Below, in pieces: positions 11,021 through 15,136 of a stretch of DNA of 64,000 nucleotides; within the stretch, counting starts at the first letter, position 1; each line of letters opens with the position of its first letter. A program made the position numbers and the translations under genes. The stretch is taken from contig MU619239.1 of NCBI GenBank assembly GCA_025201805.1, forward strand, positions 289,556 through 353,555. Reading direction: 5' to 3'. Source of the DNA: Parasitella parasitica NRRL 2501 (lineage: Eukaryota > Fungi > Mucoromycota). The notes below the pieces were generated by a model. It had not been told where the DNA came from. It did not search any database and saw only the letters and a program-made list of their open reading frames with translations.

Positions 11021-13890
11021 NTAAGGAATACACTTCATTGAAACTTGAATTAATCCATAAGGGTCACTTTGCGATACACGAATCTGACTTTTTGAAGCCA
11101 ACTCTAAATTTTCACAAAAATAAGCATTTTAAAAGGAGACCTACATTAACAGAAAAAAAAAAAGGAGTGCAGGAATATAAACAATGATCAAAACGTACCA
11201 AGAATATTTGAGAATGACTTGGCTATTATGGACGCTTCTTCTTCTGCCATCTGGAAGAATTCATTAAACACAAAAGGATTAGGCAGCTGTTTGATATGTC
11301 TGTATCGTAGGAATTTTGTTTAATTAGTTACAAATCAAGTAATCAAATAATAAATGTATGTAGATACTCCATAAATTCTTGCATATTATCTTCTTGTGGG
11401 TGCAAAAGATGATCATCAAAGCCAACATTTACGTCTGTATCTATATGAAATACATGATGAGTTTCAAATAGATTGCATCTGCTGCTTAGGCTATATACTG
11501 TACTAAAATCAATGTCGTCTCCTCCATAATCCACTGTATCATCGTTATTCATGACTTCGAACTGCTGCTTCTGCCATCTCACTGTGTCTTCTTGTCTATA
11601 CTAAACATGTGAGACCATCATGAACGAAAAAAAAAAGCGCATAATACATGTAGTTACGCTTGATTTGGTTCTACATCGCCATCAAAAACAAGTTTGTGCA
11701 GTTCAGGAGTACTGTGCACATCTATAAGATGTAATACATGTTGGTAGATCTATAAATCTATACTTTGTTACAACATAGCATCTTTTTAATACCTGAATTG
11801 GATCGAATAGAAACACCTCCACTACTGATTTGGTGGGATAAACGTCGAATGCCGTTAGCAGTAAAGTGAGAGGAGAGCGAACCGCTTGTATTGCGCCTAC
11901 GCAGGTGCTCGTATCTTCTAGATTTCTCAATCTATATTATTGCATAGCATGTTAATAAACGTGCGCGTGCAATTTATTTCCTAAAAAGTGCAATTCCTGT
12001 AATTTGAACAAAACCAAGGGAAGTTTTATGCGCCAACTAACCTGATCGTCCGCAAGTCGGTTTCTATTAAAAAATGCTAATACTTGATGCTGCTGTCCTC
12101 CTGCTCCTTGTTCAGTCAATAAATTTGTATTGTAACTAAACGTATCAAGCACAGTAGAAGGGTAGCGCAAACATTTCCTGATTATTGCCATTCTTTGCTT
12201 TTCTGTCAATTTTTGCTGTCGCTGGCTCTTCTGAATGGATGGGGTAAGTCCACGCAAAAGTCGGTCTGTAGAATAGTCCTCTGCGTAGGATAACATGGTA
12301 GTGCTTGCGACCATACGTCGCACACGTCTTGTCGTGTTAACATCAGTACGTGGTGTAACACTATCATTCACTACTCTAATTGGAAAAATAGTGCTTAAAT
12401 TACCAGTTGAAATTGAAGAAATACTCATGTTGTCTTGCTCCTCGTCTTCTTCTTGAATAAGTGATGGGGGTCCACTACGGTTATGAATAGGACCAAGACT
12501 ATAGTAGTCTGCCGTGGTAATCAAATCAGGGGCACCAAGGCGAGGAGAAGCCTGTCATAGTTTGAATATAATACAGTTTGAGTTTGTGATTTAATATTTA
12601 ATAAAATCATGTCTTGCCTGGTTTAAAGGAGAGATGTAACGAGCTCTTGCATCTGACTGTTGCTTCTGGTGGTCCAAGTGCATGTCTGCAGTATCAAGAG
12701 GAAAGTCAAACGCATTGCTCTGTGCTTGATTCTGCCTTGCCAAAGGTGCATTTAATACAGCACTGACTTCCTGCTGTTGTTGAATATCACTATTTAATAC
12801 TTATTAATGACAAGTGCATATTCAAATCAAAGATTTGCTTACAAGCCATAATCAAACATATCATAATCTTCCATTCTACCCATGTCACTCATATAGATAT
12901 GGTCAAATATATGCTGCTGCTTTATCAACGAATCAAAGGGTTGGTCTGGGTGGATCGAATCTTTTGCCATGTCGAAGGTATTGTCAGTCATTAAATTAGA
13001 TATATCTCGAGAGTTTTCAATTCTCATGATAAAAGATGAATTGTTAGCATCATTGTCCATATCATTTGAATAACTGAAATTGTAATCAAACTGTGTATAT
13101 GAAAAAGCATATTAGTTGGAAATGATAACGTAATGCCGTCTATTCATGTGATATGTACCAAAGATGAAAATGAAGGGCCTTCAGAAGACGTTTGAAATTG
13201 CAACATACTTTCAACATCAGATAGCGTGATAGCACCGGATCTATGTAGTAGTAATGAAAGACTTAGCATGCAGCCAAAAGTAATATTTTGTGCAAGGTAC
13301 TTGCGGTACAGTGGTCTTTTCCATATCAATAAAGGATGATACTGTGGGATTGAGCATGTCAGATTTCAATTTACTCCAGAGTTTAGTAGAATCATCTATA
13401 TGTGCATGTATGTAATGTAATGCGCGAGTATATTAGATCCTTAAATCGTGCTTCGTTCATATTTATGATACCATATAAAAAATAGCTTTGTTGGCGCATT
13501 ATTTTGGAAGCACCATACAATAACTGAGCTTTAGTCTTGAGTTTAAATGAGGTTTCATTTTCTAAAATCAACTGGCTGTAGTAGGCATGTACATATGGTT
13601 CAGTTGCCTGCATTATATAGCGCAACACACGCATAGTATATATATAAGTACATATATGTACACATACCACAGTTTACTGGTGTTATAAGCCTGAATTGTA
13701 TCACGCCCTATTCTCTTTTTGATATCAATTACGCCTGTTAATTGGCTTCGACTGGCTGCAAGCCTGTATGTACAATTTCTGCATGTTATTTTTCGTTACA
13801 TCTATTAAATTCAGCAAAGGATACTTTCCAAGCAATATTGAAATGTTTATTTGTTTTCAGTAATTGCTCTTCTTCAGTGACTAAAGCCAT
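11021..13890 (-). CDS. rec8: Rec8/Rad21-family cohesin kleisin (Rec8-like), ~13 exons
   Basis: The spliced N-terminus reads HFNIAWLAAS...SKLCQLILENETSFKLKTKAQLLYGASKIMRQQSYFLYDD...IDM...AITL (Rad21/Rec8 N domain). The C-terminal winged helix reads FNEFF...IAKSFSNILELASKSQIRVSQSDPYGLI. The presumed stop codon overlaps the N gap at 11021. The model needs one GA and two GC donors. Confidence 0.88.
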
Positions 13891-13937
13891 GGTGCAAAAG
13901 AGGGAAGAGAGACGAATAAATGATAAATTTAGCTACG

Positions 13938-15136
13938 CTACAATTGAATCAAAAAGTCGTCTAAATTATGTGATCTGCGTGGTATCGGCGACGAAGAAGT
14001 TGAGTTGGAAGATAGCAAGAGCGCCTGCTTGTACTTTTTCAAATCTTCAATCTCTTTGTCCAGCTCTACAGCCTTTAAATCTAGTATGTGTGTGGTTGGA
14101 ATTATCATATTATCAACTAAACTGGTCAATAATTGACCATAAACACCTGCATTGTACATTTGGGTCATGGTATTCGGTAAACTAGATGTGTTTACATTTA
14201 TAGCTGACCTCAGATCATATTTGATGCATTCGTTAGATGCTGCAAATTCTTTTTTGTACTCTTCGTACATGTGCTCGGGCAATTTCAGTAAAAGCTCTCG
14301 AATATCACTGTCTACGTCTAAGCTGGGCTCAATCAACAATGGAATATTGACTTTTTGGTTATTTTGTGCCGATTGGAAGCATGTTATTTGGACTTTTTCA
14401 GTCTGTTTAGCTGTTTAGTACGCATACACAAACTATCTGACAAAAATGAAATATGGACACATATCATCATACATACATTATCATTATGCGACTCAAAACA
14501 GGATACTATGATCCCAAAAAACTTTTCATCCATAAATTGCTGTGATAACTGTGTTCGTAAATCTAGAGTATTATACGGTAAACAACTGCATACAAGACTT
14601 GAATCAAGCTACTTACCAACATGTGACGGGAACACTGTGATATGTGGATGACTATGGTACCAGCCAATTACCATCATAGGCTTGCCTACTTTATTTCCAA
14701 ATTCCTGCAATATACAATACAGTTTAATATGCAGGCAGGGTCGAGCATTCTTCTGACAAAATTACCTCTGCCTCAAGAGCGGCCAAATGCAAATTTTCGG
14801 GTGCAATTTCAACCCTATCTTTGCGCTTATCAGATCGACTCAAGAAGGAAATGTATTTTACATGAGCTACTGATTTTGACTTTAGGTATGGATTATTGCT
14901 AGCAACAGCCTAAATACGATAGGTTATTACTTCTGCTTAAAAAATAAAATAGTTCATCTATATCTTTCCTCCCAATATCCTATCAGCATACCGATAATCT
15001 CTTCCTAATTTGACAATTTCTTGTTAGTATGTATTTTGTATTTTTACGAAAGCACTGCTTATACATTTTCTGTAGAGTAAGCGTGAGTTAGAATAAGATG
15101 ATATATGTAGGCTGGTAAAATGACTTGGTTCAACAT
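13938..15136 (-). CDS. BRCC3: BRCC36-like Lys63-specific JAMM/MPN+ deubiquitinase, 6 exons
   Basis: The spliced product contains LTHAYSTENEEIIGMLIG, RSDKRKDRVEIAPE, VIGWYHSHPHITVFPSHVDLRTQ, FFGIIVSCF and VQITCFQS, plus a C-terminal coiled coil. Intron 2 needs a GA donor. Confidence 0.93.

What the first reader, a model, noticed from the sequence alone, without database searches (positions are those of the whole stretch)
13764..13828. GA-AG intron splitting the conserved W-L-A-A of the Rec8-like kleisin
Exon 1 ends ...ATT GCT TG and exon 2 starts G CTT GCA GCC, rebuilding IAW-LAA of the Rad21/Rec8 N-terminal domain. The 65-nt intron begins GAAAGT, which is consensus GTAAGT with +2 T>A. The nearby GT at 13824 is phase 0 and runs into TGA after ~12 codons with either adjacent AG. 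A functional protein therefore appears to require the GA donor.
Basis: partly seen in the sequence, partly recalled or inferred. Interest (0 to 1): 0.8.

Follow-up and report, generated by a model that had tools for sequence, protein, structure and literature searches.

The report
Conserved GA-AG intron in mould kleisin
The first intron of a Rec8-like chromosome-cohesion gene in pin moulds begins with GA instead of the almost universal GT; every related genome examined keeps this oddity, so it is real and probably spliced, and it explains why all public gene models miss the start of the protein.

Summary
On the minus strand, exon 1 (13890-13829) and exon 2 (13763-13668) of a Rad21/Rec8-type kleisin are separated by 65 nt that begin GAAAGT and end ACAG. 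Removing exactly these 65 nt rebuilds I-A-W-L-A-A.

It is not an assembly error or a private loss-of-function allele. The same G|GAAAGT donor and YAG acceptor occur in all seven distinct orthologues fetched (two Parasitella lineages, five Mucor species) and in four further independent assemblies. Both flanking exons evolve as coding sequence in different frames (pN/pS 0.18 and 0.43). In this species no GT-AG or GC-AG excision that keeps both exons preserves the frame; the few in-frame AT-AC excisions lack any splice-site context.

Nine public protein models all lack the exon 1-2 junction. U1 and U6 snRNA genes are canonical.

A second GA-AG intron lies in the neighbouring BRCC36-like gene (14968-14910). 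There Mucor has GT at the same position.

Rival in-frame excisions exist: AT-AG 6 nt further in, which is GT-AG in four Mucor species, and a U12-like GTATCCTTT. No RNA evidence could be reached. This is a new, unusually well conserved member of the known rare GA-AG class.

The parts
13829..13890 (-). Exon 1 of the Rec8-like kleisin (ATG at 13890; 20 codons plus TG of the Trp codon)
   Evidence: 62 nt in all 7 orthologues; pN/pS 0.18 in this frame versus 0.60 and 1.45 in the other frames
13764..13828 (-). Intron 1, 65 nt, GA...AG (donor G|GAAAGTAT, +2 A at 13827; acceptor ACAG|G)
   Evidence: donor hexamer, branch motif and AG invariant in 7 orthologues; length 64-73 nt in all
13816..13824 (-). 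GTATCCTTT, a perfect match to the U12-type donor consensus, 4 nt inside the intron; phase 0
   Evidence: Degenerate in orthologues: GTATCTTTA in L005; GTGTCATTT (four species) or GTGCCATTT (M. ambiguus) in Mucor. Part of a conserved intronic block
13785..13788 (-). TAAC, likely branch-point motif (branch A about 13786, 22 nt before the 3' splice site); its TAA is also the in-frame stop of the unspliced reading
   Evidence: Invariant A.A.TAAC columns in alignment A1; read-through translation
13668..13763 (-). Exon 2 (G + LAASRSQLTGVIDIKKRIGRDTIQAYNTSKL + TG)
   Evidence: 96 nt in 6 of 7 orthologues and 99 in one; pN/pS 0.43 in this frame versus 0.91 and 0.74; the other two frames hold stops
13576..13667 (-). 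Intron 2, GTATGT...CTACTACAG, phase 2
   Evidence: Junction SKLC|QLIL is present in the M. circinelloides model P0011; same boundaries in all orthologues
13472..13575 (-). Exon 3, core of the Rad21_Rec8_N domain (QLILENETSFKLKTKAQLLYGASKIMRQQSYFLY)
   Evidence: Pfam PF04825 hit on this piece alone, 18.4 bits; orthologue P0011 scores 30.5 bits against a cut-off of 23.1, covering profile positions 35-101 only; pN/pS 0.17
13241..13304 (-). Intron 4, GC-AG (CC|GCAAGT)
   Evidence: Exact threading of the same-species model P0002; same GC donor in L005
12552..12617 (-). Intron 7, GC-AG (CAG|GCAAGA)
11031..12551 (-). Exon 8 (12551-12042) and the remaining 3' exons up to the stop, which lies at the run of N (11021-11030)
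   Evidence: collinear with orthologue P0003, which carries the C-terminal Rad21_Rec8 domain at 28.3 bits
14910..14968 (-). Second GA-AG intron, in the upstream BRCC36-like (JAB/MPN) gene: GAG|GAAAGA...TTTAG|GCT
   Evidence: Parasitella CBS 412.66 also has GA, while all five Mucor species have GT at exactly this position

Best explanation
Window 13828-13764 (minus strand) is a real major-spliceosome (U2-type) intron whose donor is GA instead of GT. Its removal joins exon 1 to exon 2 and completes the N-terminal SMC3-binding domain of the genome's second, divergent alpha-kleisin (Rec8-like). Inferred mechanism: the canonical U1 snRNA (5' ATACTTACCTG) pairs with the donor at -1 and at +1 and +3 to +8 (G|GAAAGTAT). 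That gives eight of nine positions with the single mismatch at +2, and this extended pairing compensates for the missing U. Branch site (TAAC) and YAG acceptor are ordinary. A GA donor is expected to be slow at the second catalytic step, so splicing is probably less efficient than for GT introns. Unspliced RNA ends in a stop inside or just beyond the intron. The A at +2 has stayed unchanged through a divergence at which synonymous sites are near saturation, although one A-to-T change would give the consensus GTAAGT. This suggests the weak donor is kept by selection, possibly to limit or time expression. Shown here: the sequence, its conservation, coding constraint on both exons, and the absence of a canonical alternative in this species. 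Inferred: that the GA junction is the one used, how it is recognised, and any regulatory role.
For: - Anatomy and frames.
- The same G|GAAAGT...YAG|G(A) is found in Parasitella CBS 412.66, M. circinelloides, and M. lusitanicus, M. ambiguus, M. fragilis and M. velutinosus. It is also in M. circinelloides 1006PhL and three Logan assemblies from other read sets.
- Alignment A1: positions -1 to +6, the TAAC motif and the AG are invariant.
- pN/pS is 0.18 (exon 1) and 0.43 (exon 2) in the modelled frames, against 0.6-1.45 in the others.
- Enumeration of in-frame, stop-free excisions: no GT-AG or GC-AG keeps both exons in the window, and the in-frame AT-AC excisions lack any splice-site context. In L005 the one GC-AG hit starts 15 nt inside the intron at a non-conserved GCATTT. 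GA-AG is the only pair of termini present in all seven.
- The orthologue model P0011 matches Pfam Rad21_Rec8_N only from profile position 35, so the first third of the domain must lie in exons 1-2.
- All nine public models omit the junction, as expected if predictors reject GA.
- The neighbouring BRCC36-like gene has G|GAAAGA in both Parasitella lineages exactly where Mucor has G|GT. This shows a GT-to-GA change retained in a gene that keeps its catalytic exon.
- Both U1 genes and the U6 gene are canonical, so recognition must rest on the site itself.
- Functional GA-AG introns are documented elsewhere (PMC4176328, PMC7072748, PMC10668435, PMC3577648, PMC11590231).
Against: - No transcript evidence: the only related ORFs from read-set assemblies are unspliced genomic read-throughs.
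- Other in-frame excisions cannot be excluded from DNA alone: a donor 6 nt further in (GT-AG in four Mucor species), and GT-AC or GT-GG from the U12-like site.
- In M. velutinosus a canonical GT-AG pair happens to give the same protein.
- In M. fragilis the Trp is Arg and L-A-A is M-V-A, so the motif that anchors the reading is not inviolate.
- The intron block at +7 to +20 is more conserved than in neighbouring introns and is not explained by U1 pairing alone.
- The joined exon 1-2 product was not searched or folded, by operators' rule. The fit to the domain's first third therefore rests on the short W-L-A-A motif, the own-genome Rad21 and my knowledge of the family.
Confidence: 0.62

Rival explanations
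1. The donor lies 6 nt further in (after GAAAGT), with the same AG acceptor. The intron would then be AT-AG in both Parasitella lineages, GT-AG in four Mucor species and GC-AG in M. ambiguus. The protein would carry Lys-Val inserted between Trp and Leu-Ala-Ala. The two sites could also be alternative tandem donors 6 nt apart.
For:: this excision is in frame and stop-free in all seven sequences and is canonical GT-AG in L006, L007, L009 and L010. Tandem GA/GT donors 6 nt apart are the arrangement described for the FGFR genes (as summarised in PMC4176328).
Against: The putative donor is GTCATT, GCCATT or ATCCTT. It has C at +3 and no G at +5, unlike every other donor seen in these two genes. The first intron base would vary between G and A among orthologues, which U2-type splicing tolerates poorly. 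A GC donor with so weak a context is unlikely to work. None of the gene predictors chose it although it is GT-AG in four genomes. It would interrupt the W-L-A-A motif, which is contiguous in the own-genome Rad21. In this window it is still non-canonical.
Confidence: 0.12
2. A minor-spliceosome (U12-type) intron or its relic. The donor is the GTATCCTTT at 13824, and the 3' end is set by distance from a branch site and falls at AC|AGG (Lys-Arg inserted) or at GG|CTT (Lys inserted).
For: There is a perfect 9-nt match to the U12 donor consensus in the window; I estimate the chance of this within 10 nt of the junction at about 4 in 10,000. The genome holds a U12 snRNA candidate with the branch-site-binding sequence (49 bits, E 1.6e-7). 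First readers noted U12-type introns elsewhere in it. The motif sits in the conserved intronic block. Both excisions are in frame by my own phase arithmetic (one search printed only excisions with canonical termini or ending in AG).
Against: The motif is degenerate in orthologues: 7 of 9 in L005, 6-7 of 9 in Mucor with G at +3. No TCCTTAAC-like branch site lies in the intron; the best matches share only TAAC. With the conserved AG the site is out of frame. The in-frame 3' ends would be AC, AC, GT, AT, AT, GT, AT across species, so not conserved. G at the first and C at the last intron base is a disfavoured pair in both spliceosomes (established knowledge).
Confidence: 0.06
3. Exons 1 and 2 are never productively joined. 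The gene makes an N-terminally truncated kleisin from a downstream start, as the public models assume, or is decaying. Exon 1 would then be a conserved upstream ORF or small peptide.
For: All nine public models start downstream or fuse to the upstream gene. M. lusitanicus and M. fragilis carry an ATG at the first codon of exon 2, and M. fragilis has lost the Trp. The unspliced exon-1 reading frame ends at the same codon, after seven extra codons (K-V-S/P-F-D-A), in three of the five Mucor species.
Against: Exon 2 has no ATG in four of the seven sequences, this window included, yet is under coding constraint. Without exons 1-2 the Rad21_Rec8_N domain lacks profile positions 1-34. Branch motif, pyrimidine tract and AG of intron 1 are conserved. 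Exon 1 ends with the ...I-A-W expected just before L-A-A.
Confidence: 0.08
4. Assembly or sequencing error at 13827, or a strain-private loss-of-function mutation.
For: The assembly is a draft with N-runs.
Against: The same A is present in eleven assemblies of at least seven lineages made by different groups and methods.
Confidence: 0.01

Closest known systems
GA 5' splice site of human FGFR1-3 (Twigg et al. 1998; Brackenridge et al. 2003, as cited and summarised in PMC4176328)
   Same: An evolutionarily conserved U2-like GA-AG intron. A second potential donor lies 6 nt away. Use is reported to depend on nearby sequences, including intronic sequence just downstream. Here too a block just after the donor is conserved.
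   Different: In FGFR the GA lies 6 nt downstream of a canonical GT and the two give alternative isoforms. Here the GA is upstream, the neighbouring site is weak and is AT in this species, and use of either site is unproven. The organism is a fungus with short introns. I could not read the original paper.
Abundant GA-AG introns of Eurytemora affinis and Oikopleura dioica (PMC7072748)
   Same: The donor context is G|GA followed by A-rich positions. The intron is removed by the ordinary machinery.
   Different: In those animals GA-AG is a genome-wide class (about 3% of supported junctions), and a U1 variant was proposed.
GA-AG intron 12 of Trema orientalis SYMRK (PMC10668435)
   Same: A single-base change at +2 leaves a fully functional gene. 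The BRCC36-like neighbour shows the same kind of change (GT in Mucor, GA in Parasitella).
   Different: The Trema allele is recent and population-level and derives from GC. The kleisin GA is old and fixed across two genera.
Sporadic GA-AG introns in other fungi (Fusarium graminearum, PMC3577648; Ganoderma lingzhi, 35 of about 92,000 introns or 0.038%, PMC11590231)
   Same: Fungal precedent that GA-AG junctions exist and are confirmed by sequencing of transcripts.
   Different: Those are isolated cases with no reported deep conservation. None is reported from Mucoromycota in the papers I could search.
Meiosis-regulated splicing of weak donors in yeasts (Mer1 regulon of S. cerevisiae; meiotic intron retention in S. 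pombe) - from my own knowledge, not tested
   Same: A meiotic gene carries a non-consensus 5' splice site, has an intronic conserved element next to it, and gives a premature stop when unspliced.
   Different: No regulator, no expression data and no condition-dependent splicing are known here. Mer1 itself is restricted to budding yeasts.

Membership tests
U2-type GA-AG non-canonical intron | Excision between G-A and A-G restores the reading frame and a conserved protein motif | tested here: met
   65 nt removed, and TG|G rebuilds Trp followed by L-A-A. This is the only pair of termini shared by all seven orthologues
U2-type GA-AG non-canonical intron | Boundaries conserved in orthologues (not an error or private mutation) | tested here: met
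   eleven assemblies, 7-8 distinct sequences, two genera
U2-type GA-AG non-canonical intron | Ordinary branch site, pyrimidine-rich 3' end and YAG; rest of donor complementary to U1 | tested here: met
   TAAC motif and AG invariant. Donor +3 to +8 AAGTAT/AAGTGT complements the 5' end of both U1 genes
U2-type GA-AG non-canonical intron | Spliced junction seen in RNA | not testable with these tools
   No transcript-derived sequence found
U12-type (minor spliceosome) intron | Donor /RTATCCTT at the exon boundary | tested here: inconclusive
   A perfect motif lies at 13824-13816 in the window. It is 4 nt past the position that fits the conserved AG, and it is degenerate in the six orthologues
U12-type (minor spliceosome) intron | Branch site TCCTTAAC 10-20 nt before the 3' splice site | tested here: not met
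   Only TAAC is shared, with no CCTT before it, in any of the seven introns
U12-type (minor spliceosome) intron | Minor spliceosome present in the genome | tested here: inconclusive
   One U12 candidate at 49.1 bits, below the gathering score of 53, but full length with E 1.6e-7 and carrying AGTAAGGA
Rad21/Rec8 alpha-kleisin | N-terminal Rad21_Rec8_N domain | tested here: met
   Window exon 3 alone scores 18.4 bits. Orthologue P0011 scores 30.5 bits, over the cut-off of 23.1
Rad21/Rec8 alpha-kleisin | C-terminal Rad21_Rec8 winged-helix domain | tested here: met
   Orthologue P0003 scores 28.3 bits, over the cut-off of 22.7. The window's last two exons are collinear with it. They were not scanned on their own because each piece is too short
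Rec8 (meiotic paralogue) as opposed to Rad21/Scc1 | Second, divergent alpha-kleisin beside a canonical Rad21 | tested here: met
   The own genome holds two PF04825 loci: C128 at 98 bits (canonical Rad21) and this one
Rec8 (meiotic paralogue) as opposed to Rad21/Scc1 | Meiosis-specific expression and function | not testable with these tools
   No expression data

The most novel reading that the evidence does not exclude
The A at +2 is held by selection because the crippled donor acts as a switch. In growing hyphae the intron is mostly retained, or the nearby out-of-frame GT is used, so no kleisin is made. In the zygospore a factor binding the conserved block just after the donor allows use of the GA site. 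Alternatively, or in addition, Mucoraceae (Parasitella above all) have a spliceosome that reads G|GAAAG donors routinely, so GA-AG is a regular intron class there that current annotations miss across the genome.
Probability: 0.25. Interest if true: 0.7.

Novelty: new member of a known kind. Interest (0 to 1): 0.45.

Why it matters
- It corrects a systematic annotation error. Every public model of this kleisin in Mucor and Parasitella lacks the N-terminal third of the SMC3-binding domain or is fused to the neighbouring gene, which can mislead surveys of the meiotic toolkit in early-diverging fungi.
- It is, as far as I could find, the first GA-AG intron shown to be conserved across genera in Mucoromycota. 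It comes paired with a clean natural GT-to-GA replacement in the next gene.
- That makes this locus a convenient system for asking how a spliceosome with canonical U1 and U6 copes with A at +2.
- If the weak donor is regulatory, it would extend meiosis-linked splicing control beyond yeasts.

Tried and rejected
- Assembly error: rejected by eleven assemblies.
- Variant U1 or U6: both U1 genes start ATACTTACCTG and U6 has ACAGAGA.
- Conserved RNA fold around the donor: RNAalifold gives -1.35 kcal/mol and no covariation.
- U12-type reading: no branch site, 3' ends not conserved, motif degenerate in orthologues.
- Twin-intron (stwintron) rescue: removing any internal GT...AG does not create a GT at the outer donor (by inspection).
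- Transcript evidence: the word searches and the representative search returned only annotated models and unspliced ORFs. The same-species model could not be located on a contig.
- Wider phylogenetic reach: a metagenome scan with an alignment of orthologues found nothing. No orthologue outside Mucor and Parasitella was obtained.
- Rfam and tRNA scans of the window were blank.
- Pfam on exon 1 and exon 2 alone gave nothing; 20 and 26 residues are too short.
- My first enumeration of excisions was too permissive and was redone with limits.
- The original FGFR paper was not held.
Full report
**What is there.** The window comes from a mucoralean fungus. A same-species NCBI model (P0002, KAI8647438.1, labelled Parasitella parasitica) threads onto the window with 391 of 392 residues exact. 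The gene lies on the minus strand.
- ATG at 13890; exon 1 runs 13890-13829 and ends ...ATT GCT TG.
- The next 65 nt (13828-13764) start GAAAGT and end ACAG.
- Exon 2 (13763-13668) starts G CTT GCA GCC.
- Removing the 65 nt gives ...N-I-A-W-L-A-A-S-R-S....
- Unspliced, the exon-1 frame stops at TAA 13788-13786.

**Gene identity.**
- Exon 3 alone gives a weak Rad21_Rec8_N hit (18.4 bits).
- The M. circinelloides orthologue model P0011 passes the Pfam cut-off (30.5 against 23.1 bits), but only from profile position 35. Parasitella CBS orthologue P0003 passes the cut-off for the C-terminal Rad21_Rec8 domain (28.3 against 22.7 bits).
- The own genome holds just two Rad21_Rec8_N loci: a canonical Rad21 on contig 128 (98 bits), with no intron at the W-L-A position, and this one.

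It is therefore the second, divergent alpha-kleisin, and 'Rec8-like' is reasonable. Meiotic expression is untested. Profile positions 1-34 are missing from every model, and they are where exons 1 and 2 would map.

**Orthologues.** A search with the 190-residue exon 8 found orthologous proteins. Their contigs were fetched: Parasitella parasitica CBS 412.66 (L005), M. circinelloides (L006), M. lusitanicus (L007), M. ambiguus (L008), M. fragilis (L009) and M. velutinosus (L010). All have the same gene order: BRCC36-like, kleisin, C2H2.
- In all six, exon 1 is 62 nt.
- The intron (64-73 nt) starts G|GAAAGT and ends YAG.
- Exon 2 (96 or 99 nt) starts G or A, followed by a variable codon and then GCA/GTA GCC/GCT.
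- Four more assemblies show the same GA: M. circinelloides 1006PhL and three Logan assemblies of other read sets.
- In alignment A1, positions -1 to +6, a TAAC branch motif and the AG are invariant.

**Are both exons coding?** Across the seven sequences, pN/pS is as follows:

| Exon | Modelled frame | Other frames |
|---|---|---|
| 1 | 0.18 | 0.60, 1.45 |
| 2 | 0.43 | 0.91, 0.74 |
| 3 | 0.17 | 0.77, 3.26 |

Synonymous differences reach 0.4-0.7 per site, so the lineages are well separated. Synonymous changes run right up to the junction (ATT/ATC, GCT/GCA/GCG). The two exons are in different frames of the genomic sequence, so they must be joined by removal of 3n+2 bases.

**Which excision?** I enumerated all in-frame, stop-free excisions that keep both exons, using phase arithmetic only and building no joined product.
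- In the window no GT-AG or GC-AG solution exists. The in-frame AT-AC excisions listed lack any splice-site context.
- In L005 the one GC-AG hit starts 15 nt inside the intron at a non-conserved GCATTT.
- GA-AG is the only pair of termini found in all seven.

Three rivals remain.
- **Rival C.** The donor lies 6 nt further in: AT-AG in both Parasitella, GT-AG in four Mucor species, GC-AG in M. ambiguus. It would insert Lys-Val between Trp and Leu. Its donor (GTCATT, GCCATT or ATCCTT) has C at +3 and no G at +5, unlike all other donors of these two genes, and its first base would vary between G and A.
- **Rivals B and D.** The donor is the GT at 13824, which in the window opens a perfect U12-type nonamer GTATCCTTT (13824-13816). 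The 3' end would fall at AC|AGG or GG|CTT. The genome probably has a minor spliceosome (U12 candidate; first-reader notes). However, the motif is degenerate in the orthologues, there is no TCCTTAAC-like branch site, and the required 3' ends are not conserved.
- **M. velutinosus.** By coincidence it has a GT-AG pair that yields the same protein as GA-AG.

I rank GA-AG first (0.62), rival C second (0.12), and a never-joined or truncated product third (0.08).

**Independent support from the neighbour.** A first-reader note on this window pointed to 14968-14910 in the BRCC36-like gene. I confirmed it: the exon encoding E-E-I-I-G-M-L-I-G-Y-W-E ends GAG and is followed by GAAAGA...TTTAG. Parasitella CBS has the same GA. 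All five Mucor species have GT at exactly this position, with an otherwise unchanged exon. This is a clean GT-to-GA replacement retained in two Parasitella lineages that differ by about 18-20% in nucleotides here. It shares the G|GAAAG context with the kleisin donor and has no nearby alternative. It argues that this lineage's spliceosome can use such donors. A further first-reader note reports a GA-AG intron in an ABCC gene elsewhere in the genome; I did not check it.

**Mechanism.** Both U1 genes begin ATACTTACCTG and U6 carries ACAGAGA, so no compensating snRNA variant exists. The kleisin donor pairs with U1 at -1, +1 and +3 to +8. Positions +7/+8 are AT in Parasitella and GT in most Mucor, a wobble plus a pair, so there is a single mismatch at +2.

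From established structural knowledge, the +2 U helps dock the 3' splice site for exon ligation. GA sites were therefore called 'dead-end', yet some are used efficiently (FGFR genes, as summarised in PMC4176328; SYMRK in Trema, PMC10668435). I infer ordinary U1/U2-dependent splicing with reduced efficiency.

The intron block at +7 to +20 (R-Y-C-(N)-T-T-T-N-N-T-G-N-A-T) is more conserved between the genera than the same stretch of introns 2 and 3: 5 invariant columns of 20 ungapped and 8 in the gapped alignment, against 0. It forms no conserved fold. It may be a binding site that assists the weak donor. This is unexplained.

No lineage has made the one-step change to the consensus GTAAGT despite near-saturated neutral divergence. 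That hints at selection for the weak site, but with eight lineages it is suggestive only.

**Consequences for annotation.** None of nine public models contains the exon 1-2 junction (P0002, P0003, P0011-P0018). They start at internal Met codons of exon 2, exon 3 or later. In M. ambiguus and M. lusitanicus they are fused to the BRCC36-like gene, whose stop lies only 47 nt before the kleisin ATG.

**Comparison with the known.** GA-AG introns are a known rare class: about 0.01-0.04% of introns in plants and in Ganoderma, single confirmed cases in Fusarium, and abundant only in a copepod and a tunicate (PMC10668435, PMC11590231, PMC3577648, PMC7072748). I found no report from Mucoromycota. This is a new, unusually deeply conserved member of that class, not a new kind of element.

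**Limits.**
- No RNA evidence could be reached.
- No orthologue outside Mucor and Parasitella was obtained.
- The joined exon 1-exon 2 product was not searched, scanned or folded.

Noticed in passing
window 14910-14968 (minus): The BRCC36-like deubiquitinase gene has a GA-AG intron (GAG|GAAAGA...TTTAG|GCT) just after the exon with the catalytic Glu. Parasitella CBS 412.66 shares the GA, and all five Mucor species have GT at the same position.
   Followed up: yes
window 13241-13304 and 12552-12617 (minus): Two GC-AG introns in the same kleisin gene (CC|GCAAGT and CAG|GCAAGA). The first is also GC in L005. In the BRCC36-like gene four Mucor species have GAG|GCAAGT where Parasitella has GT. Variation at donor +2 seems common in this clade.
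   Followed up: partly
window 13891-13937: Only 47 nt separate the stop of the BRCC36-like gene from the kleisin ATG on the same strand, so the kleisin promoter must overlap the upstream gene. Public models in M. ambiguus (P0014) and M. lusitanicus (P0015) fuse the two genes.
   Followed up: partly
window 13809-13822 (minus); alignment A1 columns 20-33: The intronic block right after the donor (RYC-TTT--TG-AT) is conserved between Parasitella and Mucor far better than the same stretch of introns 2 and 3. There is no conserved fold, and its function is unknown.
   Followed up: partly
L005 versus window (whole syntenic region): Two assemblies both labelled Parasitella parasitica (window genome, BD408DRAFT tags; CBS 412.66, GCA_000938895.1) are only about 80-82% identical in nucleotides here and 69% in the kleisin exon 8. 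That is more than expected within one species.
   Followed up: no
L009:2321-2413 and L014:1418-1510: M. fragilis (two independent assemblies) has Arg instead of the conserved Trp, M-V-A instead of L-A-A, and an ATG as the first full codon of exon 2. This may indicate relaxed constraint or an alternative start.
   Followed up: partly
L010:2732-2817: In M. velutinosus, exon 2 starts GAAG, so a canonical GT-AG pair (donor 4 nt in, acceptor 4 nt in) would give the same protein as the GA-AG pair.
   Followed up: yes
window 11021-11030: A run of ten N sits on the kleisin stop codon (CCT TAN...). The orthologue ends at the same Pro.
   Followed up: no
proteins P0010, P0019: Proteins labelled Rhizopus arrhizus (G6F42 tags), on contigs of about 1.1 kb, are near-identical to Mucor circinelloides kleisin fragments (P0019 92% identical). 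This probably reflects Mucor contamination in that assembly.
   Followed up: no
G000:C1:510054-510178 (L004): A U12 snRNA candidate scores just below the Rfam gathering score (49.1 against 53 bits) but is full length and carries the branch-site-binding AGTAAGGA. The minor spliceosome is probably present.
   Followed up: partly
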